A stretch of DNA of 64,000 bases from positions 1-64,000 of the IMG/VR virus record IMGVR_UViG_3300034117_001582. One strand, given 5' to 3'. Positions within the stretch are counted from its first letter, which is position 1. Each line of letters opens with the position of its first letter. The notes under the pieces are model-generated. The model saw only the letters and a program-made list of their open reading frames with translations, did no database searches and was not told where the DNA came from. The translations under genes and the position numbers were made by a program. Shown piece after piece: positions 3,660 to 24,312 of this stretch.

Positions 3660-3953
3660 TCATAATATTTCTCTTTTTACCATTTCTTCTTTATAAAGAT
3701 TAAACATCTTATCTTTTTTATTGTATCGGTACCTATGAAAAAGATATAAACACCAACATATAACTTGAATCAAATACCAAAAAAAATTTACACCAAGAAT
3801 TTCCAACCAACCAAGTAAGTTATATATAAATAAAAATAAACCAATAATCAATTGTGCTGAATTTTCTCTACCCATATAATCTAAGGTACCAATTAACTTA
3901 ATACCCAATTCATCATCAGTTAAATCCTCTAAATTATTTTTCACTGGTCTCAC
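3660..3953 (-). CDS. membrane protein (2 TM)
   Basis: two hydrophobic segments. Confidence 0.65.
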   Translation of the reverse strand: MRPVKNNLEDLTDDELGIKLIGTLDYMGRENSAQLIIGLFLFIYNLLGWLEILGVNFFWYLIQVICWCLYLFHRYRYNKKDKMFNLYKEEMVKREIL

Positions 3954-4365: not shown

Positions 4366-4422
4366 AGTTTTATTTTTATATTTAATGTAAAAGTATGAAG
4401 TTTAAACTAATAAAACAAATGG

Positions 4423-5076: not shown

Positions 5077-5131
5077 AATAATAAATATCAATTTAAATAA
5101 AAGTAGTATATTTGTAAGAAATAAAAACCCT

Positions 5132-6316: not shown

Positions 6317-6341
6317 ATTAGTAATAAATATAATTGATAAT

Positions 6342-6371
6342 AAAAAAACCTACCAAAAAGGGTAGGTTTTT
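6342..6371. terminator. intrinsic terminator hairpin
   Basis: AAAACCTACC-loop-GGTAGGTTTT. Confidence 0.7.
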
Positions 6372-6387
6372 AGTAAAAATAATTTGG

Positions 6388-6561
6388 TTATTTTTCTTTT
6401 TTATTGATTATTGACCAAATAGCCCCTGTTAGTGTCATTGCACCACCAATAATTTCTGTAATTGCCGCTTCATCAACAAGTCCTTTCATCACAACGATAC
6501 CACCAACGAATGTCAATGCATGTCTGATAATACCCATAATTTGTTCTTTTGTTAACTTCAT
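6388..6561 (-). CDS. small 2-TM putative holin (57 aa, not in ORF track)
   Basis: MKLTKEQIMGIIRHALTFVGGIVVMKGLVDEAAITEIIGGAMTLTGAIWSIINKKEK; divergent from endolysin. Confidence 0.75.
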   Translation of the reverse strand: MKLTKEQIMGIIRHALTFVGGIVVMKGLVDEAAITEIIGGAMTLTGAIWSIINKKEK

Positions 6562-6650
6562 TTTTAAGTTTTTAAAAGTTTATTTATTAATAAATATATC
6601 CAAATATTGAAATCGCAACTTTTGATATATTTATTGTAAACCTATAAATT

Positions 6651-7487
6651 ATGTTATTAAAAAATGGATCAAAAGGAGATGATGTAAAAAAACTCCAAGA
6701 AAAACTAGGTGTCGAAGCAATTGGAACGTTCGGACCTAAAACAGAAGCAGCTGTTAAAGCATGGCAAAAAGCAAATGGATTAAAGGATGATGGTGTCGTT
6801 GGTGATACTACTTGGTCTAAATTATTTGGTGTGTCAGCACCTGTGGCAACAGTAGTTAAAGAAGATGTGGTTATTCCTTCAGGAGGACCATTAAACCTTG
6901 AGAAGTTAAAAGGACACATTCCTGACTCAGTTATTGCACAAATTCCTGAAACCGCTAAAAAATTCAATATCACAAATAACTTGAGATTGGCTCACTTCCT
7001 TTCACAATGTGGTCATGAATCAGGTGGTTTTAAGGCAGTTTCAGAGAATTTAAACTACTCTGCGGACGGTTTAAAGAAAATCTTTGGTAAATACTTCCCA
7101 GGGAACTTAAATGAGTCGTACGCTCGTCAACCTGAAAAGATTGCCGCTCGTGTTTACGCATCAAGAATGGGTAATGGTGATGAAACATCAAAAGAAGGAT
7201 TTAAATTCAGAGGTCGTGGTTATATCCAATTAACAGGAAAAGCAAACTACACAAACTTTACCAAATTTATTGGTGAGGATTGTATTGCAAATCCTGATTT
7301 GGTTGCAACAAAATATCCTTTGGCTTCTGCAGCATTCTTCTTTGACTCAAACAAGTTGTGGTCAATATGTGATAAAGGAGCTGATGATGCTACGGTAACA
7401 GCAGTAACAAAACGAGTAAATGGTGGTACCATTGGCTTACCTGACAGAATCAAACATTTTAAAGAATATTATAATTTATTAAAATAA
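6651..7487 (+). CDS. endolysin: peptidoglycan-binding domain + GH19 glycoside hydrolase
   Basis: LKNGSKGDDVKKLQ/FGPKTEAAVKAWQ PG-binding; FLSQCGHES, FRGRGYIQLTG, VNGG GH19 motifs. Confidence 0.93.
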   Translation: MLLKNGSKGDDVKKLQEKLGVEAIGTFGPKTEAAVKAWQKANGLKDDGVVGDTTWSKLFGVSAPVATVVKEDVVIPSGGPLNLEKLKGHIPDSVIAQIPETAKKFNITNNLRLAHFLSQCGHESGGFKAVSENLNYSADGLKKIFGKYFPGNLNESYARQPEKIAARVYASRMGNGDETSKEGFKFRGRGYIQLTGKANYTNFTKFIGEDCIANPDLVATKYPLASAAFFFDSNKLWSICDKGADDATVTAVTKRVNGGTIGLPDRIKHFKEYYNLLK

Positions 7488-7674
7488 ATTATTTCTTTTC
7501 TTTATATGTCATTGCCAAATAAATCACATAAAGGAACAAACAGGTTGGAAATAAAATTGATAACGTTTCAGCTAAGTTCATAGTGGGGGTTTATTAATAT
7601 ATACGTAAAAAAACAAACAAAGTGGGTGTTAGTCCATAGTAGATTACCATCCGCTTTGTTTATTTTAGCATTCA

Positions 7675-7751
7675 TGGTGGTCCATCCTGGACTCGAACCA
7701 GGGACTTCAACATTATGAGTGTCGCACTCTAACCAACTGAGTTAAAAGACC
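7675..7751 (-). tRNA. tRNA with CAU anticodon, probably Ile2 (lysidine type), otherwise elongator Met; CCA encoded
   Basis: cloverleaf; anticodon arm CGACA-CTCATAA-TGTTG; T-loop TTCGAGT. Confidence 0.88.
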
Positions 7752-7940
7752 AAAAAATTAAAAAAAGTTTTTATAGAAATTTGTCCATCCATCAATTGCT
7801 GGACCCAACAAAACTATTGCTCCCATACAATATAAAATAGACACCCAATCAACATTAGTTTTAAAAAACTGATAGACACAAACTACACCCAATAGAGTAG
7901 TTAATATCCCAAAAATAGTATAAATGTGTTTTTTCATATA

Positions 7941-8216
7941 TTAATTTTTTAATATTTGTACTTGTTCCATAATGTCAGTAACCTCTTCAGGATTCAAGTA
8001 TCCAATCACATCATTTGTTACAGGTGTGTCGTAGGTTATATCACCATCTTTACCCAAAACGGCAATTTCAAATAAACCTTTCGTTCCGCCATATGAATGT
8101 GTGTGAGAAACAACAGATACCCCGTATCCATTTTCAAACACCATTCGACACTTCACACCAATTTGGAATGGTGCGTCTTCAATTTTTTCAAACTCTAAAT
8201 CTTCAAATTTTTTCAT
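7941..8216 (-). CDS. conserved phage hypothetical protein
   Basis: FENGYGVSVV...SYGG..GLFEIAVL pattern. Confidence 0.75.
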   Translation of the reverse strand: MKKFEDLEFEKIEDAPFQIGVKCRMVFENGYGVSVVSHTHSYGGTKGLFEIAVLGKDGDITYDTPVTNDVIGYLNPEEVTDIMEQVQILKN

Positions 8217-8303
8217 AATACAAGTATATAGATAACATTTTAATTAATCAAATATAAAAAAATCCTCATTATTATTGTAGATAACCATTTAATTTATCCT
8301 GTA

Positions 8304-8801
8304 TCATATCTTATCTCCCTTTAGTAAATTCTCTTTCGCCCACAACGGTTGTAAATTGGTGTAGTGACACAACTTAATAACCTCATCTTCCATCTTACCT
8401 GATGATATTGGAATAATATGGTCTATGTGCCACTCTCCGTGATTATTCCACGTCATACCCTCTTTAAATAAAGATTCCATATGTGATTTAACCACTGACC
8501 AATCCGCACCTAATATTGTATGTGCTCTTGATTTCTTTGTGTATCCATTTCTACTTAAACCTTTCCTTACACACACTCTCATTATCTGAATGAATCCTGT
8601 CATTGGATCTTCCTTTTCTTTTCTTCTCTTTCTAGCGACTTCATATGATTTCCACCACAAATCAAACACAGGGTCATTTTGTCTTCTTAGTTTGTTTCTT
8701 TGGTATCTAATCTTATTCTCACAGGTCTTACATTGTTTCCTACTATCTCTATAGTTAGACTTAGACTTCGATACGTTACAGGTATTACATACTTTATCCA
8801 T
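8304..8801 (-). CDS. HNH endonuclease with N-terminal Zn-finger
   Basis: two CxxC pairs; WHIDHIIP...HYTNLQPLWAKENLLKG. Confidence 0.85.
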   Translation of the reverse strand: MDKVCNTCNVSKSKSNYRDSRKQCKTCENKIRYQRNKLRRQNDPVFDLWWKSYEVARKRRKEKEDPMTGFIQIMRVCVRKGLSRNGYTKKSRAHTILGADWSVVKSHMESLFKEGMTWNNHGEWHIDHIIPISSGKMEDEVIKLCHYTNLQPLWAKENLLKGDKI

Positions 8802-8869
8802 ACCACAAAGATAAACATAATTTTTATATAAACAAAAAATCCACCACTATTATGTGAATCATATTTATG

Positions 8870-8966
8870 TAGTCAGGACAGGAATCGAACCTGTTATCCC
8901 CCATTTGGATGCCTACTCCACCATCGGTGTCTCGGACTTGGTGCGTTATCCAACACGCCCCTGACT
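8870..8966 (-). ncRNA. tRNA-like RNA with intact acceptor and T arms but an expanded, non-canonical anticodon region
   Basis: AGTCAGG/CCTGACT acceptor; ACAGG-TTCGATT-CCTGT T arm; no 5-bp stem with 7-nt anticodon loop. Confidence 0.7.
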
Positions 8967-8974
8967 ATTTTTTT

Positions 8975-9050
8975 TGGCGGAGATTACGGGAGTCGAACCC
9001 GCTCCGAACGCCGTGACAGGGCGACATCTTAACCATTTGACCTAATCTCC
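8975..9050 (-). tRNA. tRNA-Asp(GUC), CCA encoded
   Basis: cloverleaf, loop CTGTCAC. Confidence 0.92.
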
Positions 9051-9222
9051 AAATTTATCAGTCTTTCCTGATCGTCACCCCTAACCCACAGGTATGAACC
9101 CGTATCGTAGTAAAGCTTGGTTGGCTATTAACACACTCTCAAACATTCTACTTCCCGCGGTACGAAATTTGTATCTTACTTAGCCCACCGTCAGCGGTAT
9201 GGGTACTTGAGTTTATGTGTCG

Positions 9223-9294
9223 TAGTCCCACCGGGAATCGAACCCGACTTTCCAGGATGAAAACCTGACGACCTAACCGATAGTCGATGGGACC
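9223..9294 (-). tRNA. tRNA-Glu(UUC)
   Basis: cloverleaf, loop TTTTCAT. Confidence 0.92.
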
Positions 9295-9367
9295 AAAAAT
9301 AAGGGTAGACACGGGTCTAGCTAGCCATCTTTCAGGAAAGGCCCTTACTAATATTCTACCCTTTTAG

Positions 9368-9440
9368 TTGCGGGAACAGGGCTCGAACCTGTAATCTCGG
9401 CTTATGAGACCGAGCGGATGACCAATTTCCACATCCCGCG
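9368..9440 (-). tRNA. initiator-type tRNA-fMet(CAU)
   Basis: C1:A72 mismatch, purine11:pyrimidine24, loop CTCATAA. Confidence 0.85.
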
Positions 9441-9445
9441 ATATG

Positions 9446-9519
9446 TAGTTAATACTGGACTCGAACCAATGACCTATTCCGTATCAGGGAATCGCTCTAA
9501 CCAACTGAGCTAATTAACT
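9446..9519 (-). tRNA. tRNA-Ile(GAU)
   Basis: cloverleaf, loop CTGATAC. Confidence 0.92.
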
Positions 9520-9594
9520 ATGTCCTCGTCTTTCCGAGATGTCAATAGGGATATTTTGTGTACAATTCAGGACTCTCATATACTTCCTTATTAG

Positions 9595-9667
9595 CACGCC
9601 CGGATGGATTCGAACCACCAACACTTGGTTTTGGAAACCAATGCTCTACCGTTGGAGCTACAGACGT
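9595..9667 (-). tRNA. tRNA-Trp(CCA)
   Basis: cloverleaf, loop TTCCAAA. Confidence 0.92.
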
Positions 9668-9679
9668 GTGTCTTATTTG

Positions 9680-9753
9680 GGTAACTAATGGGAATTGAAC
9701 CCATGGCACAAGGTACCACAAACCTTTGCTCTACCAACTGAGCTATAGTCACC
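9680..9753 (-). tRNA. tRNA-His(GUG)
   Basis: G-1:C73 identity pair, loop TTGTGGT. Confidence 0.92.
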
Positions 9754-9860
9754 ATTTATTTGTAGTTAAGTAGCTGACACACACTCTCGTTTCACCATCT
9801 TATGTCAACAGGTTAATGCACTTTACGAGTTTCCCGTTTCTTACCACCACAATATTTTAA

Positions 9861-9966
9861 TTTCAATGAACTTCTTCTTTCTTCACGGGAGTAGGACACC
9901 AACCTCTCACTTCCTACCCCCGTTGTTTCTCTTACAAAGATATGTAATCACTTTTGATTTGCCAAA
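9861..9966 (-). promoter_or_regulatory. Bacteroidota sigma-A-type promoter with hairpin + boxA-like leader for the tRNA operon
   Basis: TTTG (9966-9963), 20 nt, TATCTTTG (9942-9935); then hairpin ACGGGGGTAGGA...TCCTACTCCCGT and GTTCATTGAAA. Confidence 0.75.
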
Positions 9967-10001
9967 CAATTTGTAAAATATTTTTTATTTTTTTTTAAAA
10001 C

Positions 10002-10031
10002 AAAAAACCCCACTTTTTTGAAGAGGGGTTC
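10002..10031 (-). terminator. intrinsic terminator
   Basis: AACCCC..GGGGTT hairpin with minus-strand U tract. Confidence 0.6.
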
Positions 10032-10070
10032 TAAATGTTTTATTTGTGTTTTTTAATTACCTGATTGTGT

Positions 10071-10478
10071 TCATCTGTAATTATCATCACTTCCATCATC
10101 CATGTCCTCATCGTTCTCAAGACCACGCCATACACTATCATAATCAGGATTATCAGCAAAACCTAATGCTCCACTTTTACTACCTTCTAAATCTCTAATA
10201 TAATTCTTTAAAAGATTAATAACTTGGTCTATCCTTTCTGCTCTTTGTCTTGGACTTACTTTTTTACTCAAACTATGTTGACTTGATAAATATCCAAATT
10301 GTCCTGGTTCAGAAAAAAGATTACCTTCATCCTCTCTAAAGAATATATCATCTAATTTTCTTTCAAAATCTAATTCTTTGTCTTCTTTTTTATTTGATTT
10401 AAATCCATCACCTTCGTTGACAATTCTTCTAACTATACGAGTTAAATCTCTTTCTGTTAATCTCATCACTCTTTTCAT
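10071..10478 (-). CDS. leader-bearing hypothetical protein (MKRVMRLTERDLTRIVRRIVNE)
   Basis: leader nearly identical to that of 53276..53776. Confidence 0.8.
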   Translation of the reverse strand: MKRVMRLTERDLTRIVRRIVNEGDGFKSNKKEDKELDFERKLDDIFFREDEGNLFSEPGQFGYLSSQHSLSKKVSPRQRAERIDQVINLLKNYIRDLEGSKSGALGFADNPDYDSVWRGLENDEDMDDGSDDNYR

Positions 10479-10537
10479 ATTAATAGTTTTATATATAAAT
10501 ATGTCTATTCATGAAAAACGTAATCATTAATGTTTTT

Positions 10538-11035
10538 TTATTTTATTTCAAATGCACATCTCATGATTTTTTTGGTTTTAGTGGCATCTTCAGGGTTTCC
10601 AATTACAACACCATCTTTGATTGTAAACGCATGTCGGTTAACAAGAACAAAGAATGTGCCCTTTGGGTTTTGTTTAACAAATGTCCCCACAGTCATGTTT
10701 CTTTTCTTTGTCTCACCTTTGATTGTTACATCATACATTAATGATCTTAACATTTGGTCATTATGTCTTACCCCAACAGGACAAACCTTTTTACCATTAA
10801 CCTTAAACAAACTGTCACCCATTTTGACAAGTTTGGATACCGTTCCGTATGTACCATTTCTTGGTTTTCTTCCAAATTCATCGGCAACATACCTATGAGC
10901 ATAATCATAAGATACTTCAAATGAGGATGCAAATGCTCTAACAACACAATCATTTCTTTCGCCTTTGGCAGTTGCTGATTCCGCATATCCTTTGATTGCC
11001 GTTCCTGTTGCTTCGTATGGTAGTTTGTTTTTCAT
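10538..11035 (-). CDS. hypothetical protein, possible Cys-His peptidase-like fold
   Basis: NDCVVRA and RHAFTI; start at MKNKL after a TATCTTTG promoter. Confidence 0.6.
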   Translation of the reverse strand: MKNKLPYEATGTAIKGYAESATAKGERNDCVVRAFASSFEVSYDYAHRYVADEFGRKPRNGTYGTVSKLVKMGDSLFKVNGKKVCPVGVRHNDQMLRSLMYDVTIKGETKKRNMTVGTFVKQNPKGTFFVLVNRHAFTIKDGVVIGNPEDATKTKKIMRCAFEIK

Positions 11036-11107
11036 ACTACAAAGATAATAAAAAAAATTGATATAAAAAAAAGGCATTGAAAAAAAATTCAACACCTTTT
11101 TAATAAT

Positions 11108-11178
11108 AAGTTGTGGCGGGACTCAAACCTGCGACACGTCCGAAATCGGATTGCTCTAACCAACTGAGCTACACAACT
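11108..11178 (-). ncRNA. tRNA-like RNA or pseudo-tRNA with collapsed anticodon loop
   Basis: AGTTGTG/CACAACT acceptor, canonical D arm GCTC-AGTTGGTTA-GAGC, anticodon arm TCCG-ATTT-CGGA, T-loop TTTGAGT. Confidence 0.75.
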
Positions 11179-11374
11179 TAATTTTTCGTTTTAAGGTCAC
11201 CCAAAAAACATCATCAATTAACCTAAATTAATTATAGGACTTCTTTTTCAGAAAAGAAAGCGATTTTCTCTTCATATTCAAACATTTCTTTGATAAACTG
11301 AAAATAGTCCTCTGAATTAATAAATTCATAATGTTGTTGTTCAAAAACGTCTTCCATAATTTTAATTTTTTTAG

Positions 11375-11448
11375 TGATTCCGAAAGGATTCGAACCTTTA
11401 ACCCTCGCCTTAGAAGGGCGATGCTCTATCCAGTTGAGCTACGGAACC
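11375..11448 (-). tRNA. tRNA-Arg(UCU)
   Basis: cloverleaf, loop CTTCTAA. Confidence 0.93.
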
Positions 11449-15754: not shown

Positions 15755-17272
15755 TTACGCAACCCTTACTTTATTTCCGGGGTTTATTTTTAACCCATTG
15801 GCATAATTAAGTTGGTTTAATATTTCCATAGTTAAACCAGCACCTGCAAATTTTTGTAATATTTTTTGTAGAGTGTCTCCTTTAGCGATTGTATAATATA
15901 ATTTAGTAACTTTTCCAACAATTTGTTTTGTAATATTTTTATCTCCTACCGCAGCCACTTTTTTCCCTAAACTTACTAAATCAAAATGGCTACCTTTAGC
16001 CACTTTCATATTTTGAGTTAATGCTCCTGTACTGAAATATTTCTTCATTCCTTTCCCAATTTCTAAAAAAAAGTTTTCAACCGACTTAGTAAATTTTTGG
16101 AGTGGCTTCATTACTTTTCCAATTAATGGAATTTTAGTGGTAATCCATGTAAATGCTTGTCCTATTTTTGTAATTATTGTTCCTCCACCTGTTACAATTT
16201 TTTGTAACCATGGAACTACGGTTTTAGTAATTGCGGGAGTTGTTTTTGAGGCGCTTGCAATTCCTGGTATAAATGCTTGAATTGATTTAATTGTGGTTAA
16301 AGTGGTTTTAACTCCCTTGAATATTGCCGCCGCAGCCCCCGAACCTAATAATCCGACACAATCAGTTAATACATTATACCAATTCCAATTTCCTTTTGCG
16401 AATCCTTGATACCCAATGTCATAAACAGTTAGTAATCCCCAAGCTATCAAATTTACCAAATTACCAACACCCGTTAGAGCTAAAACTATTTGTATAGCTA
16501 TTCCGGCAACTCCATTTAAAAAATTTCTAAATGTTTCAACCCAATCTTCGAATGTCATTTTTTTTATTTTTTCCCAATTGTCGTAAACTTTTTTTGCGTC
16601 CATTCCTAATTTGATTGTATTTAATCCTGGAACCAAATACGCAAACTCACTATCCAAAAATTTAGTAATATAAGGTGTAACAGTTTGAACCACTTTTTTT
16701 CCGATCTCAATACCTTTATTTATTCCTGTTTTTACTGTTTGATATCCTTTTTGTAACCCAGTTTTTACTGTTTGCACTCCGGCCTTTGCTAGTGCAACAC
16801 CTTTATTTGCTACTGTTTTTACTGCATTAACACCTGAGTCGACTAAATTACCAACACCGTCCCAAAATCCTTGTTCATTTAATGAAATGTTAAAATTTCT
16901 TCTATTAAGGAATCCACATTCGTAAAGTACGCTACTTTTTAAAAAATCAAAAAAGTTATACAAAGTTCTAAATGAATGATTGGAACTTTCTAATAACATA
17001 TTATTTGTAAAATTATTATCAAATTGCTCATGTATGAAATTTGTTCTTGGGAATATATCTAAAACGTAATTATCCATCATCTCTTCAAGATATTCTTGTC
17101 TTTTAGATTCGTTCATTTTTTTCATGTTTTTAATGTGAAGACCTTTTTGGCTATTCAATTCATTAAATAAAGTTCCAAAAACTTTTTTAAAATTTGACAT
17201 TTCCATTTGTTGTTTTGTTTTTTGAGCAATTAAGTCAACTTGGTTTTCAGATAGTAAATATATGTTTTTCAT
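15755..17272 (-). CDS. leader-bearing protein with hydrophobic helical bundle and C-terminal LysM
   Basis: YTIAKGDTL...INPGNKVRV LysM; long Gly/Ala-rich hydrophobic helices. Confidence 0.75.
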   Translation of the reverse strand: MKNIYLLSENQVDLIAQKTKQQMEMSNFKKVFGTLFNELNSQKGLHIKNMKKMNESKRQEYLEEMMDNYVLDIFPRTNFIHEQFDNNFTNNMLLESSNHSFRTLYNFFDFLKSSVLYECGFLNRRNFNISLNEQGFWDGVGNLVDSGVNAVKTVANKGVALAKAGVQTVKTGLQKGYQTVKTGINKGIEIGKKVVQTVTPYITKFLDSEFAYLVPGLNTIKLGMDAKKVYDNWEKIKKMTFEDWVETFRNFLNGVAGIAIQIVLALTGVGNLVNLIAWGLLTVYDIGYQGFAKGNWNWYNVLTDCVGLLGSGAAAAIFKGVKTTLTTIKSIQAFIPGIASASKTTPAITKTVVPWLQKIVTGGGTIITKIGQAFTWITTKIPLIGKVMKPLQKFTKSVENFFLEIGKGMKKYFSTGALTQNMKVAKGSHFDLVSLGKKVAAVGDKNITKQIVGKVTKLYYTIAKGDTLQKILQKFAGAGLTMEILNQLNYANGLKINPGNKVRVA

Positions 17273-17303
17273 TTTCTTTTTAATTATAAATATATAAAGA
17301 AAC

Positions 17304-17336
17304 AAAAAAAGGTGGAATCTCTTCCACCTTTTTTTG
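17304..17336. terminator. bidirectional intrinsic terminator
   Basis: A7-GGTGGAA-TCTC-TTCCACC-T tract. Confidence 0.75.
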
Positions 17337-17393
17337 GGTCGACATTGAATGTCAACTGCCCCACCACTTCATTTTAAAGATTAAACAAAGAAA

Positions 17394-17660
17394 CTATCCC
17401 TCAAGTTTTGATTTTGCAATAACAACATCAGACATTGACATTTCTTTGGTGTTACCTAACACCAAACTTTCTTTTAACATTACATTTGGTACGTGAATTA
17501 AAAAGTCTTTACCGTTGTATGTCGTAAAGTCATTACCCAAAGCTAATGCTGTGTGAATCATTTTTAAAAAAATCTTGAATTGAGTTTCATCAACAAATGT
17601 TTCGTTGATTAACTCCCCATACTTTGGGTGAACAAGTAATATGTTTTTAATTGATGCCAT
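17394..17660 (-). CDS. hypothetical protein
   Basis: ORF preceded by TATCTTTG. Confidence 0.7.
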   Translation of the reverse strand: MASIKNILLVHPKYGELINETFVDETQFKIFLKMIHTALALGNDFTTYNGKDFLIHVPNVMLKESLVLGNTKEMSMSDVVIAKSKLEG

Positions 17661-17715
17661 TTTCTTATTGTTTCTACAAAGATAATAAATTTATTTTAAT
17701 TTTTCAAACATTTTT

Positions 17716-18135
17716 TTAATGAACATACTTAATTTTTGAAATAATGGTATCGCTACTGTTTGTTAACCCAAAGTATTTTAAATCATCCATAACGTATTGT
17801 TTGATGTCGTATCGGTAATAATCATTTATTGATCTAACTCTACTAGATAAAATATGTTTAACATAATATTCGCTATGATTCATAAACTTGGTATTTTTAA
17901 TGTCAACTTCAACATCAACCTCATAAACAAATGAGTTCTCTCTTTCCAAATAATATCTGTTTCTATATTTTCTAACGGATGTGATTTTAATTGTAGACCC
18001 TGAAAGGATATCGTAACGATCATATCGATTATCATGTCGACCATCTACAGTTATGGCCATATTTTTGTTAATTTTTTTAATAGACAATATCTCTTTGTCT
18101 TTTATTGCTCTACCAATTTTATATCCGTTTTCCAT
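17716..18135 (-). CDS. hypothetical protein
   Basis: start MENGYK after TATCTTTG. Confidence 0.65.
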   Translation of the reverse strand: MENGYKIGRAIKDKEILSIKKINKNMAITVDGRHDNRYDRYDILSGSTIKITSVRKYRNRYYLERENSFVYEVDVEVDIKNTKFMNHSEYYVKHILSSRVRSINDYYRYDIKQYVMDDLKYFGLTNSSDTIISKIKYVH

Positions 18136-18214
18136 ACAACAAAGATACGCAAAAAAATGAATTGCACAAAAAAACCCACCAAAAAGTAGGTTTAATTTTA
18201 AAATAAATGTAAAA

Positions 18215-18400
18215 TTATTTTTTTGTTGTCTCAGAAACAACTTCAGTTGTTGTTAAAGTAGAGTCCGATACGTTTGTTACATCTTCACTTGAAACTTCAG
18301 TCGAAGCTTCAGTTGTTGCTCCATTTCCGTTTTCACCACAAGCAGTCATAAGAGTGATTGTCGTAAAAAGAACGATAGATAAGATAATTAATTTTTGCAT
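18215..18400 (-). CDS. small lipoprotein
   Basis: signal + LMTAC lipobox, Thr/Glu-rich tail. Confidence 0.65.
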   Translation of the reverse strand: MQKLIILSIVLFTTITLMTACGENGNGATTEASTEVSSEDVTNVSDSTLTTTEVVSETTKK

Positions 18401-18431
18401 GCTTTCAATTGAATTTAAAGTTTATGTTAAA

Positions 18432-19310
18432 AAAAAACCTGAGATTACAGTTTTTGTAAGTGTCTTTCGAGTCATTATTGTTTCTACTCTTATCCACAGG
18501 ATTTTGTCCCGTAACACTCATTACCGATTGGTTAGACCAATCACCCCTTGACGATACAACTACTCTCTTACTACTCCTGTCTCCCCAAGATTGCGTCCTG
18601 GTTCGGTCTTCGACGACCTAGAGATTTTTCATAAAAATACGGTCAAACTTGCGGTTATCACGTTCCACTGACAGCCAGTGAATAGGTGGGTAACTTCCGT
18701 TATATCGTGACGAACACTTTTGCTTTTTAGTTATAAGTTTTACCTTTTCTATAAAAGTTTTTGTGTTGTGGATTAATCAAAGTTGTGGTCCGTCTTAAGC
18801 TTCATTATCTTTTGAATAACAAAATACCAAACAACTTCGTGAAATGTCCCCATTTCAATATTTCAAGACTACTTCGAAACTAACCCCTTGGTAGAAGTCG
18901 GTTAAGGTTAATAACGGCACCACCCGTACATTAACATACCTTTCGGTTTTAAGTACCCTCTGATACTGGAACACGCAATAATGAAATTGGATAACCTCAT
19001 TTTTTGCAATATCCCTACGGGTTATTCCTATTGGTGTTCCCACCTCAAATTGACAACCCACATTGCCAATTCGTCTAATCAGTTTTCCTACAGCGTTGCC
19101 CTCGGTACTCAAGATTAAACGGTATCCCGCTTGTGTACTCAAGTTCGGTTACCCAAACCGCAAATCAGTTACACTTCCGACTCACTTTATCCTACTTTCA
19201 TAGTTTATTTTATGGACTATACACGGCCCAAGACCTTCATGTCAACTACTCTTAAAGAAAGGGGGGTTAATCTCTTACTTAATTCAAGTCGATCACTTCG
19301 ATCGGTTATA
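18432..19310 (-). ncRNA. large structured noncoding RNA, probably GOLLD-like
   Basis: ~0.85 kb GC-elevated region without a credible ORF; many GNRA-capped hairpins on the minus strand; terminal AAAACTGTAATCTCAGGTTTT; own promoter. Confidence 0.75.
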
Positions 19311-19311
19311 A

Positions 19312-19380
19312 TTTCAAAGAACTTTTCGGACTTTTCCGATTTGTTTTACAAAGTTAAGACATTTATTTTAATCTGTCAAG
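19312..19380 (-). promoter_or_regulatory. Bacteroidota-type promoter + boxB-like hairpin + boxA-like element
   Basis: TTG, 20 nt, TAACTTTG (19356-19349); TCGGA-AAAG-TCCGA; GTTCTTTGAAA. Confidence 0.75.
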
Positions 19381-19397
19381 TACCTTGTGAACTTTTT

Positions 19398-19541
19398 TTA
19401 ATTTTTTTCTACAAACACATCATCAGTTCCGTATTTGTTAGCCTGTGCAGTTGCAAATTCAGCACTTGGCGTATAATACTTTTTCCCGTCAGACCCATAG
19501 TAAGAAAATATTAAATTTTCAACAACTAATGTTTCACTCAT
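19398..19541 (-). CDS. small hypothetical protein (47 aa, not in ORF track)
   Basis: MSETLVVENLIFSYYGSDGKKYYTPSAEFA... Confidence 0.55.
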   Translation of the reverse strand: MSETLVVENLIFSYYGSDGKKYYTPSAEFATAQANKYGTDDVFVEKN

Positions 19542-19747
19542 AAAAAGAGTTTTTTTTAAAGGTTAATATTTCAATTAATTAATTAGGACATTTCCTAATT
19601 GTTTTACAAATCTAATACTATTATTTTGATTTGTCAAACAACCGGTAAAAAAATTTTGATTTTTTGAGGGTATATATAAATATACGTCTGTTAACCAAAA
19701 AAACACAAATTATTATTTTTTTTTAATTTTTTTAGGTATTTATTAGT

Positions 19748-20104
19748 ATGAATCTTTTCATTAATGATAATATGTTTAAATGTAAAGTTTGCGTTACACC
19801 AAACTCAATTACAGATGGGATGAAAAATAAAACATTCAACATGAATTTTAATGGTATGTTTTTCATTATGCCAAACAAATCTCAACAATCGTTTTGGATG
19901 TATGAATGTATAACACCATTAGATATTGTTATGATTGATGGTGATACTATTACAAAAATACATCATAATTGCTTACCTTGTGAGGTTGAGACCTCTTGTG
20001 AAGAATACTCTGGTTATGGTAATTACATATTAGAACTTCAAGGAGGTACCTGTCATGACTCTAATATCAAAGAGGGTGACCTTATTAGTACTACCCTTTA
20101 TTAA
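19748..20104 (+). CDS. DUF192 family protein
   Basis: GMFF..FWM...PLDIV...YILELQGG. Confidence 0.8.
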   Translation: MNLFINDNMFKCKVCVTPNSITDGMKNKTFNMNFNGMFFIMPNKSQQSFWMYECITPLDIVMIDGDTITKIHHNCLPCEVETSCEEYSGYGNYILELQGGTCHDSNIKEGDLISTTLY

Positions 20105-21671
20105 TATAATCATTTAAAACTTTAACGAATTCTTGTTGTATCGCTTTGGTTAATTGAACATAAGATGTGATATTATCCGTAGCGACTACTTGAGTATTTG
20201 TCCCTTCTTTTTCTATTTGTCTCATTGCCGCAAGTATTTGTGGGTCAGATAGTCTTTTATATTTAGATAATTTTGATTTAATATCTTTTACAAAACTATT
20301 ATTACCTTTGTAATCACTAATAACCGTTAATCTATTATCGTCATACACAACCACCGCTTCTTTTTTATTTCTATGTAGATAACTAATACCTGAAATGTTT
20401 GTAATACATTTATGTCCACCTGAATTAGCATTAATAACATCCCAACCATTAACCGTAATTCTATCCAATAAGTCTTTTTGTTTGTCTGTTAAATTTCTAT
20501 AAAGTTTTTCAGAAATATTACCAATAATGGTTAATAGCTTATCATCGGCGTTTGCGTTAAATGATTCTCTACTTCCATATATGGCAATTAAATCTTTTAG
20601 TGTGAACCCAACTGACTCGTATTCGGCTTGTATTTCAGATAGTCTTTTAAGTGTTCCAAATGTAATCTTCATTCCTTTTAATTCACTTTCAAATTTACCC
20701 AATACTTCATTTTTCATTTCACCTAAATCAATACCCTTTAACGCCCTATCCTCTTTGAATGGGTTACAAGAAGCTTGTACTAATCCTAATGGCCAAGCAA
20801 TAACTATAAAGTCAGCATCGGGATTGTTTTTAAATGGTGTATATCTATCATAAGAACCTGGTTTAATCATAGACCCACCACCGTACTGTACAATAATACT
20901 ACCCACTCTTGTTACGTTTGGATTCTCTTTTTGTTTTTCAATATAATTTGCTTGGTTTTTAACCAAATCTTCAGTACTTGCATACCCTTTAGTTGATATT
21001 TGTTTTTTAATATTATTTAAAATACTTAAAAGTGATGGCTGAGCATTTAATACTATCTGTTCTAAAAACTCTGGTTTGTTTTTAAATGCCAATAATAATT
21101 TATTTGCAACCAATCCCATTAAAAACTTGTTTGATTTTAAACTACTATCCTTATCAAATTTAAGTAAGTAATTCATAACCATTTCAGGTGATATTTTGTT
21201 AACCGCAAAATTTGCAGAGTCTACCGTCGATATGATATTAATATCTTCTGTTGGAAATATGTCTTTTGGTGATACAATTTGTGATATTGTTTCTATGTTT
21301 GATCTTGAAGATTTAAAACTTGTGGCGGTTTCTGGTTCAACACCAGCTTGTGTATCGTGGTGGTCAGTATGAATAACAAACATGGGTTTACCGTGAGCAA
21401 AATCAACCAAAACCGGCATCACATCACCACTAGCATCAGGTTTCTTAACTGAAAATTCTTTATCTCCGTATTGGATAACCTCAGCATCAACCACTTTAAT
21501 CCCGTAGTTTTCTAAATAACTTTTCATTCCTATCGCAGTGGTAACACCATCTAAATCTTGATGAAAATAAATTTTAGCCTTTTTGTAACGTTTTGATAAT
21601 TCATTAATATTTCTAATCCCCGATTCGTTAAGCAATCGTTTGTACTGTGATTCCGTTATTACCATTTTCAT
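20091..21671 (-). CDS. DHH-family phosphoesterase with N-terminal leader
   Basis: FHQDLDG, VDFAH, TDHH, SGGH motifs. Confidence 0.8.
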   Translation of the reverse strand: MKMVITESQYKRLLNESGIRNINELSKRYKKAKIYFHQDLDGVTTAIGMKSYLENYGIKVVDAEVIQYGDKEFSVKKPDASGDVMPVLVDFAHGKPMFVIHTDHHDTQAGVEPETATSFKSSRSNIETISQIVSPKDIFPTEDINIISTVDSANFAVNKISPEMVMNYLLKFDKDSSLKSNKFLMGLVANKLLLAFKNKPEFLEQIVLNAQPSLLSILNNIKKQISTKGYASTEDLVKNQANYIEKQKENPNVTRVGSIIVQYGGGSMIKPGSYDRYTPFKNNPDADFIVIAWPLGLVQASCNPFKEDRALKGIDLGEMKNEVLGKFESELKGMKITFGTLKRLSEIQAEYESVGFTLKDLIAIYGSRESFNANADDKLLTIIGNISEKLYRNLTDKQKDLLDRITVNGWDVINANSGGHKCITNISGISYLHRNKKEAVVVYDDNRLTVISDYKGNNSFVKDIKSKLSKYKRLSDPQILAAMRQIEKEGTNTQVVATDNITSYVQLTKAIQQEFVKVLNDYINKG

Positions 21672-21705
21672 AATAATAAATACTCTATAAAGTAAAAAAT
21701 CCCAT

Positions 21706-22557
21706 TTATGAAAATGGGATTTCTTGTATTTGACCTAACGTTTTAAAATATTCAACTCTTGTTTTGGCAATTTCTACATAATTTGGTGATAACTCAATGC
21801 CCAACCATCTACGACCCAATATCTCTGCAGCCACCAAACTTGTTCCTGATCCAGCAAATGGGTCTAATACTACATCGTTTTTGTAGGACAATATTTTAAT
21901 CGCCTTTGTTGGGATGTCCATTGAGAAGGTCGCCTTGGTGAGTGATTTAGTATCTGCAAAGTAATTCCACTGACCAAACACAAGTTCCATAAACTCTTTC
22001 TTATCTGTCTCTTCATATACAATTTTTTTCTTTAATGACCCATCTTCCTGTTCAATGTCAGTAGGTGTCCCTTTCCACTGAGGTTCTCCTTTAACCTTTT
22101 TAATGTGGTGTTTTTTGTATGCTAAGATTACACACTCCTTAGGATTATAAATGTATGGGCTTGATGGACTCATCCAAGAACCCCAAGCAGTTGTTTTACT
22201 TCGGTGTGGTGATTGTTCCTCAAGGTCGACAATCCCAAAGAACCCATAACCAATTTCTTTCATTATTTGCCACATCTCAGAAACAAAGAAAATTCTTCCA
22301 CCTTTCTTTTGACGATTAATCTCATAGGGTATGTTCAACGCAATTCTTCCATCGTCTTTTAATAATCTATATGCCTCACTTAACCAATTTTTGGCAAACT
22401 CAACATACTCGTTAAATTCAACATCATCCTCATGTACATCGTACGCAATTCCAACACCATAAGGTGGGGATGTTACAATTAAATCCACAGACCCTTCTGG
22501 TAATGTTTTCATTACCTCAACACAATCTCCGTTTATTATTTTTCCTGTTTCTATCAT
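21706..22557 (-). CDS. DNA methyltransferase, N4-C/N6-A beta class
   Basis: TSPPY before DPFAGSGT. Confidence 0.92.
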   Translation of the reverse strand: MIETGKIINGDCVEVMKTLPEGSVDLIVTSPPYGVGIAYDVHEDDVEFNEYVEFAKNWLSEAYRLLKDDGRIALNIPYEINRQKKGGRIFFVSEMWQIMKEIGYGFFGIVDLEEQSPHRSKTTAWGSWMSPSSPYIYNPKECVILAYKKHHIKKVKGEPQWKGTPTDIEQEDGSLKKKIVYEETDKKEFMELVFGQWNYFADTKSLTKATFSMDIPTKAIKILSYKNDVVLDPFAGSGTSLVAAEILGRRWLGIELSPNYVEIAKTRVEYFKTLGQIQEIPFS

Positions 22558-22561
22558 ATTC

Positions 22562-22768
22562 TTATTTTATACTCTCTAAAAAATCCCATACTTCATTTGA
22601 AAACTCTTCATATAGGTCCCCATCCTCATCATCCGATAAGTCAACAATGTATTCATCCACACAAAAATCCACAATTATTTCGTGCACTTCACCAAGTGTT
22701 TGTTCCTCATTTTTTAACCCTTCATATTGATTTAGGATATGGTTTTTTTGTTCTTCTGTTAGTTTCAT
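22562..22768 (-). CDS. acidic hypothetical protein
   Basis: ORF in run. Confidence 0.6.
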   Translation of the reverse strand: MKLTEEQKNHILNQYEGLKNEEQTLGEVHEIIVDFCVDEYIVDLSDDEDGDLYEEFSNEVWDFLESIK

Positions 22769-22909
22769 TTTTTTTAATTTAAAATCAGTACCACTAATAC
22801 AATGACTACTACGATTATTGACATAATAACCGAATAACCAAAGACTTTATTGTTTCTTTCTACTTGTTCTCTAGTTCTACCTTGCCATTCGTTTGGATTC
22901 CAATCCATA

Positions 22910-23188
22910 TTAGACATTTTTTTCTAAATTATCAATATGGTGTTGAAGATACCACATCGCTTTCTTAAGGTCCTCCAATTCTTTTTCTTTATTTTTCTTT
23001 CCTGCTCTTGAAATATACTTAACCGTATTACCCAAAGAAAATCCTAAGTCCCAAGCATCAATAACCTTGATTGCCTCGTATTCATTATTTTCTCCTCCGT
23101 AATGTTGTGGATGGTTTATTTGTTCTATTTTTGGTGGGGGACACTGACAAAGTCCGGCGCCACCACATATACATTCTTGTTCCATCAT
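22910..23188 (-). CDS. DUF3310 family protein
   Basis: INHPQHY...GNTVKYISRAGKK..EDLKKAMWYL. Confidence 0.88.
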   Translation of the reverse strand: MMEQECICGGAGLCQCPPPKIEQINHPQHYGGENNEYEAIKVIDAWDLGFSLGNTVKYISRAGKKNKEKELEDLKKAMWYLQHHIDNLEKNV

Positions 23189-24312
23189 TCTTCTCTATAT
23201 TCTTTTAACAATTCTTCATTTGACATTGTACCAAACTTCTGATTTAAACCTTCTGTTTTAACATTTTTAGTCATCATATGTTTAACCTCATAGATTTGTT
23301 CGGCAGTATCTAAAGATGTTACAATTTCTTTAATAATTTTATATGGATTGGCATTTGATCCAGGTCTTCTGTCCTCAACATATCCTTTCCATTCTTTTGC
23401 CGTGTCTTGTGGTACACGAATAGACGCTCCACGATCAGACACACCCCAACTGAACGTATCAATCGATTGTGTTTCAAAATCACCAGTAAGTCGTAAATCA
23501 TTATTAGAACCATACGCTTTAATGTGTTCTTGGTGTCTTGACCCAAATGAATTAAATATTGATAAAAAATATTCGTATCCTCCTTTATTTCTCATTCTAT
23601 CATTTGAAAAGTTGGTGTGAAGTCCTGAACCATTCCATTCACCATAAATTAATGGTTTTGGATGAAGCTCAATATGATAACCATATTTTTCAGAAATCTT
23701 ATAAAGGAAATATCTACTCATCCATAAGTCATCCCCACCTTTTAATTTACCTTTTGAAAATACTTGATATTCCCATTGACCTAACGCAACTTCAGCATTT
23801 GTTCCGGTAATGTCAATTTTATGGTCTAAACACACATTTAAATGTTCTTCAACAAAATCACGACCAACCGCATTATGACCAACACCACAATAATATTTTC
23901 CTTGTCCTTCAAGTAATCTTCTATCGTGACCTAAAACATTACCTCCAGTTTCGTTATATATGAAATATTCTTGTTCAAAACCAAACCATAAATCTTCTTG
24001 TTCTTTATTAAGGGGAGCCCTATGATTTGATTTATGTGGTATATTATCAGAATCCATTACCTCACAAAACACATAAAGAACACTTTTTTCTAATGGAAAA
24101 GAATTTGATTTATAGAGTCTAACAGGTTTTAATAAACAATCTGACTTACCTGTCTCTGCCTGATTAGTTGATGACCCATCAAAATTCCATATAGGAAAAT
24201 CTTCAATTTTTAAGGTCTTAATTGATTCGTATTCAACAATCTTAACTTTACTTCTAAGATTTGGCTCCGGTTTATATCCGTCGAGCCACACGTATTCTAA
24301 CACAACTTTCAT
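23185..24312 (-). CDS. glnII: glutamine synthetase, type II
   Basis: EYVWLDG, WNFDGSST, GFEQEY, NAEVALGQWEYQ, WNGSGLHTNFS, DRGASIR, EDRRP. Confidence 0.93.
   Translation of the reverse strand: MKVVLEYVWLDGYKPEPNLRSKVKIVEYESIKTLKIEDFPIWNFDGSSTNQAETGKSDCLLKPVRLYKSNSFPLEKSVLYVFCEVMDSDNIPHKSNHRAPLNKEQEDLWFGFEQEYFIYNETGGNVLGHDRRLLEGQGKYYCGVGHNAVGRDFVEEHLNVCLDHKIDITGTNAEVALGQWEYQVFSKGKLKGGDDLWMSRYFLYKISEKYGYHIELHPKPLIYGEWNGSGLHTNFSNDRMRNKGGYEYFLSIFNSFGSRHQEHIKAYGSNNDLRLTGDFETQSIDTFSWGVSDRGASIRVPQDTAKEWKGYVEDRRPGSNANPYKIIKEIVTSLDTAEQIYEVKHMMTKNVKTEGLNQKFGTMSNEELLKEYREE

What the first reader, a model, noticed from the sequence alone, without database searches (positions are those of the whole stretch)
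18432..19310. ~0.85-kb ornate noncoding RNA (GOLLD-like or a new class)
Seen: GC-elevated with no credible ORF. Minus-strand hairpins include GTTTGG-GTAA-CCGAAC, GGTG-GGAA-CACC, ACC-GAAA-GGT, GAAATG-GGGA-CATTTC, CCAGGAC-GCAA-TCTTGG, AATTGGCAAT/GTTGTCAATT, CACTG/CAGTG and GATTGG/CCAATC. It has a dedicated promoter and boxA. Known: GOLLD and ROOL are large phage-associated RNAs of unknown function, often near tRNAs. From memory, the size and 3' TGTAATCTCA stem resemble GOLLD; this is unverified.
Basis: partly seen in the sequence, partly recalled or inferred. Interest (0 to 1): 0.78.

Follow-up and report, generated by a model that had tools for sequence, protein, structure and literature searches.

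The report
GOLLD giant RNA of lake phage
This stretch encodes a GOLLD RNA, an already known ~800-base phage RNA that builds hollow RNA-only cages. It is very abundant in lake RNA samples and sits behind a ribosomal-RNA-style transcription leader, which I found in no paper.

Summary
Window 18436-19231 (minus strand) is a full-length GOLLD RNA, not a new class.

- **3' half:** it matches Rfam GOLLD end to end (285.9 bits against a cut-off of 150).
- **5' half:** Rfam does not model it. It is conserved in about 80 viral contigs and starts at the same hairpin as GOLLD env-38, whose 14-subunit RNA cage has been solved by cryo-EM.
- **Structure:** across 44 distinct homologues, 193 predicted pairs are 97.9% standard, and 127 of them show compensatory changes.
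- **Expression:** in four independent lake metatranscriptomes, depth is 170-8600 over 18417-19298 and 0-5 on both flanks. It is therefore an abundant, stable RNA.
- **Transcription signals:** the sigma-70 promoter match is spurious because its -10 box lies in the loop of the first RNA hairpin. The likely start is a Bacteroidota-type promoter (19379-19349), followed by a hairpin and the boxA motif GTTCTTTGAAA (19322-19312). This layout is kept in 40-42 of the 44 homologues. The same motif sits in the rRNA-operon leaders of Bacteroidota and Bacillota.

Family and fold are known, and the biological role is still unknown. The rRNA-like leader is the only possibly new detail.

The parts
19374..19379 (-). 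-33 element (TTGACA; TTG is the core) of a Bacteroidota-type promoter
   Evidence: It lies 20 nt upstream of TAACTTTG. A TTG at this spacing is present in all 40 homologues that have the -7 motif. The motif is enriched in the window: 16 against 7.7 +/- 3.0. Promoter function is inferred; no start-site mapping was done.
19349..19356 (-). -7 element TAACTTTG (TAnnTTTG) of the probable GOLLD promoter; the start site is expected near 19341-19345
   Evidence: TAnnTTTG lies 16-55 nt (mostly 26-28 nt) before the boxA in 40 of 44 homologues. The same motif precedes boxA in Bacteroidota rRNA leaders.
19326..19339 (-). Leader hairpin (UCGGAAAAGUCCGA), in the position of boxB in rRNA leaders
   Evidence: A hairpin is predicted here in nearly all homologues, with differing stem sequences: CGGA/UCCG, CAGGA/UCCUG, UUGGU/ACCAA, UCGGG/CCGA. 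The terminator scan flagged it, but it is followed by A-rich sequence, not a U-run.
19312..19322 (-). boxA motif GUUCUUUGAAA
   Evidence: It is the only exact copy in the 64 kb window (0.08 expected). GTTCTTTGA[AT][AT] is present in 42 of 44 homologues, and the exact motif in 37. The same 11-mer lies 61-121 nt before the 16S 5' end in at least 120 genomes of Bacillota, Bacteroidota and other phyla.
19232..19311 (-). Variable leader spacer between boxA and the first GOLLD hairpin
   Evidence: Its length is 0-109 nt and its sequence is not conserved among homologues. It is transcribed: the X1 contig 19201-19327 has depth 14.5, against 141-265 in the RNA body.
18840..19231 (-). GOLLD 5' domain (18 consensus helices)
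   Evidence: Identity is 70-100% in about 80 viral contigs. It has 100 consensus pairs, 69 with compensatory changes. It begins at the same hairpin as the env-38 construct. RNA contigs end at 19223-19231.
18436..18839 (-). GOLLD 3' domain (Rfam RF02032, model positions 1-416)
   Evidence: 285.9 bits, full length. The long-range helix that Rfam marks as a pseudoknot, ACGAUAUAAC/GUUGUAUCGU (18708-18699 with 18560-18551), is intact. It has 93 consensus pairs, 58 with compensatory changes.
18714..18777 (-). A/U-rich variable linker inside the 3' domain (J13/15); no tRNA is embedded
   Evidence: Length and sequence vary among homologues (A1 columns about 625-675). It corresponds to the disordered, inward-facing linker of env-38 (PMC12286853). 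No tRNA was called here.
18429..18452 (-). Last hairpin (AACU-GUAAUCUCA-GGUU) and a run of 9 U: the 3' end or terminator
   Evidence: The loop UGUAAUCUCAG is invariant in 40 of 44 homologues. RNA contigs end at 18439, with adapter sequence directly attached in X4. Depth beyond the U-run is 4 or less, against 180-1500 inside.

Best explanation
Window 19231-18436 (minus strand) is a full-length GOLLD RNA gene of an uncultured freshwater jumbo phage. The window is identical to a 292 kb IMG/VR contig over the aligned GOLLD region. The host is probably a member of the Bacteroidota.

**Shown here**
- The 3' domain is a full-length member of Rfam GOLLD.
- The 5' domain is conserved, covaries, and is of the same type as that of GOLLD env-38.
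- The RNA accumulates in lake metatranscriptomes far above its neighbouring genes.
- The gene is preceded by a conserved promoter-hairpin-boxA leader that copies the layout of host rRNA-operon leaders.

**Inferred**
- Host RNA polymerase starts near 19343.
- NusB/NusE and the other Nus factors load on the boxA. This makes the polymerase resistant to Rho while it transcribes about 900 nt of untranslated RNA, and may help the RNA fold as it is made.
- The roughly 110-nt leader is then trimmed, leaving a mature RNA of about 795 nt that begins at the first hairpin and ends at the last hairpin plus U-run.
- Copies of the RNA assemble, without protein, into a closed homo-oligomeric cage, as env-38 does (14 subunits, D7 symmetry). 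The loop motifs that form the env-38 inter-subunit bridges are present here. The variable A/U-rich linker would point into the cavity.

**Role in infection.** This has not been established for any GOLLD. My best guess is a structural or compartment role tied to the phage's take-over of translation (tRNAs, ribosomes). That guess is speculation.
For: - **Family.** Rfam GOLLD scores 285.9 bits over model positions 1-416, and no other family matches at E up to 1.
- **5' domain.** Homologous at 70-100% identity in about 80 of 88 viral contigs. It opens with the same hairpin and GAAA-capped stem as the env-38 construct.
- **Structure.** RNAalifold on 44 distinct sequences gives 199 pairs, 133 with compensatory changes. 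Over the 193 pairs of the two domains, 97.9% of cells are standard pairs, against 34-46% with slid partners. Many of these are G-U pairs, which would be A-C on the other strand, so the minus strand is the RNA strand.
- **Bridge motifs kept.** GAAA loop, GAGGGCAAC, GGAA loop, GGGA loop with its UCC partner, CAAAAG loop, GGAUAAG, and self-complementary CG/GC in the two kissing loops. The window has the CG variant of loop L21a, one of the two variants reported in PMC12286853.
- **Expression.** At least 18 lake or freshwater metatranscriptome runs from 16 studies hold the sequence. In 4 runs, depth is 170-8600 over 18417-19298 and 0-5 outside. Contig ends joined directly to adapter sequence lie at 18439 and 19223.
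- **Leader.** The single exact boxA in the window lies here. It is conserved in 42 of 44 homologues, and 40 of 44 also have TAnnTTTG upstream, nearly all of them with a hairpin in between. The same 11-mer is the rRNA-leader boxA in at least 120 genomes, including many Bacteroidota.
- **Phage context.** PHROG and jumbo-phage protein matches, plus a tRNA array.
Against: - Transcription start, Nus dependence and leader processing are inferred. The Logan contigs carry no strand, and they can break where strains diverge. Part of the 10-18-fold drop from RNA body to leader could therefore reflect strain mixtures.
- Cage assembly and subunit number were not tested. The window lacks the extended P11 arm that env-38 uses for one bridge (38 of 44 homologues have the short CGAAAG tip). 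GOLLDs with different arms form 8-, 10- or 12-subunit assemblies (PMC12990946).
- The env-38 comparison was made by eye, from a lossy PDF text.
- tRNAs are 7-11 kb away, not adjacent as in many GOLLD loci.
- No boxA was found upstream of GOLLD in Streptococcus, Caulobacter, Mycobacterium or Vibrio phages, so the leader is not a general GOLLD feature.
Confidence: 0.85

Rival explanations
1. It is a GOLLD RNA, but the GTTCTTTGAAA motif is not a working Nus-factor site. It would be a conserved promoter-proximal element with another role (processing signal, binding site for a phage protein), or it would be inherited along with a captured host promoter region.
For: No boxA was found upstream of GOLLD in four phages of other phyla. 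No leader-trailer stem like that of rRNA operons exists. One-mismatch copies are not enriched in the window: 8 against 4.4 expected.
Against: The 11-mer is nearly invariant in 42 of 44 homologues while its flanks and the spacer vary freely. It sits in the same promoter-hairpin-boxA order as in Bacteroidota rRNA leaders. A long untranslated transcript is the kind of RNA that needs protection from Rho (established knowledge of rRNA antitermination).
Confidence: 0.3
2. The region is protein-coding, through the 95-aa minus-strand ORF 19142-18855 or the 127-aa plus-strand ORF 19131-19514. The hairpins would then be incidental.
For: Open reading frames of 95 and 127 aa exist.
Against: Neither has a Pfam hit. 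The 95-aa frame carries stop codons in 42 of 44 homologues, and in 25 of them the aligned length is not a multiple of three. Substitutions preserve base pairs, not codons. Rfam hit.
Confidence: 0.01
3. It is a different large structured RNA that merely carries a GOLLD-like 3' module: a new class, a ROOL, a group I or II intron, or an RNase P-like RNA.
For: The Rfam model covers only the 3' 404 nt, and GOLLD 5' halves are known to vary between lineages (PMC12286853).
Against: No other Rfam family matches at E up to 1. The 5' half shares its first hairpin, GAAA stem, GAGGG(C/U)AAC, GGAA loop, GGGUGGUGCC and GGGA-loop blocks, in the same order, with the 5' domain of the solved GOLLD env-38.
Confidence: 0.03
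4. The high RNA-library depth is an artefact (DNA carry-over, depletion bias, or summing over many strains). The RNA would not be especially abundant in infected cells.
For: Contig depth is summed over related strains that share conserved words. The runs were chosen because they hold this sequence. Metatranscriptomes can contain DNA (caveats printed).
Against: DNA carry-over would cover the flanking genes equally, yet they are at 0-5 against 170-8600 in four studies. One 491-nt contig spans the strain-specific linker with 2 mismatches at depth 265, while this strain's own leader is at 14.5 and its flanks at 0-3.
Confidence: 0.07

Closest known systems
GOLLD env-38 (marine metagenome; cryo-EM 14-subunit D7 nanocage; Kretsch et al. 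2025, PMC12286853)
   Same: Both have two-domain RNAs of about 800 nt. Both have the same first hairpin and GAAA-capped second stem, and the same order of conserved blocks in the 5' domain. The 3' domain matches the same Rfam model. The loop motifs used for bridges B1-B4, B6 and B8-B10 are recognisable. Both have an A/U-rich internal linker.
   Different: - The window has a short CGAAAG tip where env-38 has an extended P11 arm that makes bridge B5, so the subunit number may differ.
- Loop L21a has CG instead of GC.
- env-38 lies next to a tRNA-Met, whereas here the nearest tRNA is 7 kb away.
- Nothing is known about an env-38 leader, because its flanks were not available to me.
- The comparison was made by eye only.
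GOLLD of Lactobacillales and other cultured-phage lineages (Streptococcus Javan565, phiCbK, PegLeg, Vibrio PG07)
   Same: The 3' domain matches the same Rfam model: 165-256 bits in those phages, 286 here. All are encoded in phage or prophage genomes.
   Different: Those copies lie within or beside tRNA/tmRNA arrays. They have no boxA-like motif within 1300 nt upstream. Their 5' domains differ; only 134 nt of Javan565 align to the window, at the 3' end.
ROOL RNA (phage-associated, 8-subunit nanocage)
   Same: Works alike: a large phage RNA that self-assembles into an RNA-only cage with an internal disordered linker, and is often near tRNAs (PMC12286853).
   Different: Sequence and secondary structure are unrelated. 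There is no Rfam ROOL match in the window.
rRNA-operon leader with boxB-boxA (Nus-factor processive antitermination)
   Same: Both have the same 11-nt boxA and the same order: promoter, hairpin, boxA. Both use the Bacteroidota -7 motif, and both lie upstream of a long, structured, untranslated, highly expressed RNA.
   Different: The product is not rRNA. There is no leader-trailer complementarity that could form an RNase III processing stem. Nus binding was not tested.

Membership tests
GOLLD RNA (Rfam RF02032) | Covariance-model score at or above the curated gathering score, over the full 3' domain | tested here: met
   285.9 bits against 150, model positions 1-416 of 416, E = 1.2e-80, window 18436-18839 minus strand.
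GOLLD RNA (Rfam RF02032) | The long-range helix that closes the core of the 3' domain (marked as a pseudoknot in Rfam), and the terminal UGUAAUCUCA hairpin | tested here: met
   The helix pairs 10 of 10 positions: 18708-18699 with 18560-18551. Ten pairs covary across the 44 sequences. Terminal loop UGUAAUCUCAG is invariant in 40 of 44.
GOLLD RNA (Rfam RF02032) | A separate structured 5' domain of about 400 nt, giving a total of about 800 nt | tested here: met
   18840-19231 has 100 consensus pairs, 69 with compensatory changes. It is homologous block by block to the env-38 5' domain (by eye). The total is about 795-800 nt.
GOLLD RNA (Rfam RF02032) | Encoded by a phage or prophage, often near tRNA genes | tested here: met
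   The GOLLD region is identical to a 292 kb IMG/VR viral contig. There are PHROG and jumbo-phage protein matches. Eight or nine tRNAs lie at 7675-11448 on the same strand, but 7 kb away rather than adjacent.
GOLLD RNA (Rfam RF02032) | Expressed as a discrete RNA | tested here: met
   depth is 170-8600 over 18417-19298 and 0-5 on the flanks in four lake metatranscriptomes. Strand and exact ends were not resolved.
GOLLD RNA (Rfam RF02032) | Protein-free assembly into a closed dihedral homo-oligomer (14 subunits for env-38) | not testable with these tools
   Only the conservation of bridge-forming loops could be checked (mapped by eye to Supplementary Table 2 of PMC12286853). The P11 arm used in bridge B5 is absent.
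rRNA-type boxA antitermination leader | A boxA sequence identical to that of host-phylum rRNA leaders, placed in the transcribed leader downstream of the promoter | tested here: met
   GTTCTTTGAAA at 19322-19312 is the single copy in the window. The same 11-mer lies 61-121 nt before 16S in at least 120 genomes, including Chitinophagaceae, Flavobacteriales and Bacteroidales. It lies 26 nt after TAACTTTG.
rRNA-type boxA antitermination leader | Conservation of the motif among homologues while the flanks vary | tested here: met
   42 of 44 have GTTCTTTGA[AT][AT], and 37 of 44 have the exact motif. The spacer to the first hairpin varies from 0 to 109 nt.
rRNA-type boxA antitermination leader | Leader-trailer complementarity that forms a processing stem around the mature RNA | tested here: not met
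   duplex energies of leader against trailer are no better than shuffled trailers (mean z = +0.3; none of 44 below -2).
rRNA-type boxA antitermination leader | NusB-NusE binding, and read-through of Rho-dependent termination | not testable with these tools
   This needs binding assays and in-vivo reporters.
   GOLLD is the only match in 18300-19500 at E up to 1.

The most novel reading that the evidence does not exclude
In lake phages of Bacteroidota, the GOLLD gene is built as a mimic of a host rRNA operon: a host-type strong promoter, a boxB-like hairpin and an exact rRNA boxA. The cage RNA would then be made by Nus-modified, Rho-resistant, fast polymerase that assists folding, and its leader trimmed afterwards. 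The phage's tRNA array may use the same device (a boxA with one mismatch at 9871-9861). If so, production of GOLLD depends on, and may compete for, the host's rRNA antitermination machinery. That would give the first experimental handle on how and when these cages are made. I found no paper linking GOLLD to boxA or antitermination.
Probability: 0.45. Interest if true: 0.55.

Novelty: new member of a known kind. Interest (0 to 1): 0.33.

Why it matters
GOLLD is one of the largest bacterial or phage non-coding RNAs. It was recently shown to form RNA-only nanocages, and its function is still unknown.

This locus adds no new class, but it offers three useful things:

- **A well-bounded representative.** It is a natural, highly expressed member of the main lake lineage, with 44 distinct homologues for comparison.
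- **Abundance in the field.** The RNA is far more abundant than neighbouring phage transcripts in many independent lake metatranscriptomes.
- **A testable account of its synthesis.** The idea is an rRNA-style boxA leader on a Bacteroidota-type promoter.

The promoter also points to a tractable host phylum in which to look for a culturable phage-host pair and ask what the cage does.

Tried and rejected
- **Sigma-70 promoter at 19245-19216.** Rejected. Its -10 hexamer is the loop of the conserved first hairpin of the RNA, and the TTGACA lies in a spacer that is not conserved.
- **rRNA-like leader-trailer processing stem.** Rejected. It does no better than shuffled controls in 44 homologues.
- **BoxA as a general GOLLD feature.** Rejected. 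It is absent upstream of GOLLD in Streptococcus, Caulobacter, Mycobacterium and Vibrio phages. It is present in the 635 kb uncultured phage LR745206.1.
- **Coding ORFs.** Rejected.
- **Other Rfam families in the 5' half.** None found.
- **A reference copy of env-38.** I looked in viral contigs for a copy to align properly and found none. The sequence printed in the paper's PDF supplement is lossy: its numbering is off by 1-2, and its 3' end disagrees with the reverse primer. I mapped motifs by eye and did not type the sequence in.
- **'Joints' 19048 to 19182 in the RNA contigs.** These are relatives' contigs that fit only at conserved blocks. They are not splicing.
- **Phage database.** No close phage genome was found. 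There were only weak DNA hits to two phages.
- **Bridge B7 (L20 with J13/15).** It could not be mapped with confidence.

Full report
**1. What is there**

The flagged stretch is richer in GC (0.36-0.42) than its surroundings (0.20-0.33). An Rfam scan of the whole window gives one non-tRNA hit: GOLLD (RF02032) at 18436-18839 on the minus strand. It scores 285.9 bits against a gathering score of 150 and covers model positions 1-416 of 416.

- The alignment keeps the long-range helix that Rfam marks as a pseudoknot.
- A permissive scan of 18300-19500 finds nothing else at E up to 1.
- The Rfam model describes only the conserved 3' domain, so the other half of the flagged region (18840 to about 19231) had to be judged separately.

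**2. The 5' half**

A 29-nt pattern from the 3' domain retrieved 88 IMG/VR viral contigs.

- In about 80 of them, the 420 nt upstream are 70-100% identical to the window.
- Two contigs are identical to the window. One is a 291,867-bp contig, so the window belongs to an uncultured jumbo phage.
- Clustering at 98.5% leaves 44 distinct sequences, which form alignment A1.

RNAalifold predicts 199 pairs on A1, and 133 of them have compensatory double changes. My own count on that structure gave these figures:

| Domain | Pairs | Standard pairs | Pairs with compensatory changes |
|---|---|---|---|
| 5' domain | 100 | 97.9% | 69 |
| 3' domain | 93 | 97.9% | 58 |
| Either domain, partners slid 1-3 columns (control) | same | 34-46% | 14-32 |

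- Many of the pairs are G-U, which fixes the minus strand as the RNA strand.
- The ORFs in the region have no Pfam hit. The 95-aa minus-strand frame has stop codons in 42 of 44 homologues.

**3. Relation to the solved GOLLD**

Kretsch et al. 2025 (PMC12286853) solved GOLLD env-38 (833 nt) as a 14-subunit, D7-symmetric RNA-only cage.

- Its 5' domain (residues 1-420) forms the caps of the cage.
- Its 3' domain (421-833) forms the ring.
- A disordered linker points inward.

The construct sequence in their supplement begins with the same hairpin as the conserved core here: AUGGCC...GGUCGU in env-38, UUGGGCC...GGUCCA at 19231 in the window. The same blocks then follow in the same order:

- the GAAA-capped stem
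- GGAUAAAGUG
- GAGGG(U/C)AAC
- the GGAA loop
- GGGUGGUGCCGUUAUUA
- the GGGA loop

Their table of inter-subunit contacts can be matched to motifs that are kept in the window and in most of the 44 homologues:

| Bridge | Motif kept |
|---|---|
| B1 | GAAA loop |
| B2 | GGG...AAC |
| B3 | GGAA loop |
| B4 | GGGA loop with UCC in its partner loop |
| B6 | CAAAAG loop |
| B8, B9 | self-complementary dinucleotides in the two kissing loops |
| B10 | GGAUAAG |

- The window has CG where most homologues have GC. GC and CG are the two variants the paper reports for loop L21a.
- One difference matters: the window, like 38 of the 44, has a short CGAAAG tip where env-38 has an extended P11 arm that makes bridge B5.
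- GOLLDs that lack arms assemble into 8-, 10- or 12-subunit forms (PMC12990946), so the subunit number here is open.
- This mapping was done by eye. The PDF text is lossy, and no env-38 copy was found in the collections.

**4. Expression**

At least 18 RNA runs labelled freshwater, lake or aquatic metatranscriptomes, from 16 studies, hold 43-70% of the sampled words of 18400-19400. I laid contigs of four runs from four studies on 16800-21200.

- Depth is 170-8600 across 18417-19298 and 0-5 elsewhere, including both neighbouring genes. This rules out DNA carry-over and shows a very abundant, discrete RNA.
- Contigs end at 18439, with adapter sequence directly attached in one run. They also end at 19223-19231, with adapter after 19223 in another. 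These positions are the last hairpin and the first hairpin.
- A contig of this strain's own leader (19201-19327) has depth 14.5. The RNA body has 141-265, including a 491-nt contig that spans the strain-specific linker with 2 mismatches.
- This fits a leader that is transcribed and then removed.
- Two caveats apply. The contigs carry no strand and can break where strains diverge, so start site and processing remain inferences.

**5. Transcription signals**

The sigma-70-like site at 19245-19216 is spurious, because its TATAGT is the loop of the first RNA hairpin. Aligning the upstream regions shows a conserved leader:

| Element (minus strand) | Window position |
|---|---|
| TTG(ACA), the -33 element | 19379-19374 |
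| 20-nt gap | |
| TAACTTTG, the -7 element | 19356-19349 |
| Hairpin UCGGAAAAGUCCGA | 19339-19326 |
| GUUCUUUGAAA, the boxA | 19322-19312 |
| Variable spacer, 0-109 nt (80 nt here) | 19311-19232 |
| First GOLLD hairpin | from 19231 |

- The boxA core is present in 42 of 44 homologues, and TAnnTTTG with an upstream TTG in 40 of 44. The hairpin stems differ in sequence but keep their pairing.
- The 11-mer occurs once in the 64-kb window (0.08 expected).
- To test whether it really is a boxA, I scanned 185,579 species genomes for the 11-mer 61-121 nt upstream of the 16S 5' primer site.
  - The loci came from Bacillota, many Bacteroidota (Chitinophagaceae, Flavobacteriales, Bacteroidales, lake Bacteroidia), Acidobacteriota, Nitrospirota and others.
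  - Chance would give only a handful of hits (my estimate from the motif length, not a computed control).
- In the Bacteroidota leaders, the same TAnnTTTG, hairpin, boxA order is visible.
- The TTG-N19-21-TAnnTTTG motif is enriched in the window (16 against 7.7 +/- 3.0). It sits ahead of many minus-strand genes, which supports a Bacteroidota host.
- The leader is specific to this lineage. It also precedes GOLLD in the 635-kb uncultured phage LR745206.1. It does not precede GOLLD in the Streptococcus, Caulobacter, Mycobacterium or Vibrio phages examined.
- No leader-trailer stem exists.
- I found no paper that links GOLLD with boxA or antitermination.

**6. Mechanism**

*Shown:* family membership, structure conservation, abundance, and the conserved rRNA-like leader.

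*Inferred:*
- Host polymerase starts near 19343.
- Nus factors loaded at the boxA protect the roughly 900-nt untranslated transcript from Rho.
- The leader is trimmed.
- The transcript ends at the last hairpin plus a run of 9 U. Read-through depth is 4 or less, against 180-1500 inside.
- The mature RNA of about 795 nt self-assembles into a cage like env-38.

The biological role of GOLLD is unknown. The literature offers encapsulation of tRNAs, ribosomes or other cargo as hypotheses, and reports rising GOLLD expression during phage lysis (PMC12286853). I cannot add to that from sequence alone.

**7. Verdict**

This is a new member of a known kind, in fact of the founding 'lake' lineage, and a standard Rfam annotation would have found it. 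The modest added value lies in three things:

- exact boundaries
- evidence of abundance in the field
- the rRNA-style boxA leader, which is testable and, as far as I could find, unreported

Noticed in passing
window 9861-9965 (minus strand), upstream of the tRNA array 9752-8975: The tRNA array has the same leader layout as GOLLD. A Bacteroidota-type promoter (TTGGCA...TATCTTTG) is followed by a long GC-rich hairpin. Then comes a boxA-like AAGTTCATTGAAAT with one mismatch, about 110 nt before tRNA-His. One-mismatch copies are not enriched overall (8 against 4.4 expected), so this is suggestive only.
   Followed up: partly
A1 columns about 1000-1090; e.g. L001, L013, L046 downstream of GOLLD; absent at window 18429-18360: Most homologues carry a conserved trailer, ATGGAGC(N)ACCGGUAAAAAA, followed by a GC-rich hairpin and U-run, 15-80 nt after the last GOLLD hairpin. 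The window and L076 lack it. Its role is unexplained; a second terminator, a tiny ORF or a processing signal are possibilities.
   Followed up: no
window 18215-18400 (minus strand): A 61-aa ORF directly downstream of GOLLD has a lipoprotein-type signal peptide and cysteine (…TITLMTAC-GENG…) and a Thr/Ser/Glu-rich tail. It has a terminator-like hairpin after it at 18193-18172. RNA depth over it is near zero in the four runs.
   Followed up: partly
L035, L036, L043 (tRNA-Met directly after GOLLD); L035, L069, L073 (tmRNA within a few kb): Some homologous loci have a tRNA-Met immediately 3' of GOLLD, as reported for env-38, and several carry a phage tmRNA nearby. About half of the held loci show no tRNA at all within the fetched DNA.
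   Followed up: partly
window 7675-11448 (minus strand): There is an array of 8 tRNAs by ARAGORN (Met x2, Asp, Glu, Ile, Trp, His, Arg). Rfam adds a ninth hit at 11108-11178 (43 bits) that ARAGORN does not call.
   Followed up: no
window 19748-24312 and 45335-47755, 62747-63943: Neighbouring phage genes include DUF192, a DHH-like phosphoesterase, an N6/N4 DNA methyltransferase and a glutamine-synthetase-like protein. There is also an SbcC-like nuclease subunit. A glycosyltransferase is 35-38% identical to those of 309-385 kb Xanthomonas and Stenotrophomonas jumbo phages. Most large ORFs have no PHROG match.
   Followed up: partly
window 19048-19182, RNA contigs of runs X1, X4, X5: Contigs appear to 'skip' 133-134 nt here. 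They are contigs of related strains that fit the window only at conserved blocks on either side of a variable arm. They are not evidence of splicing.
   Followed up: yes
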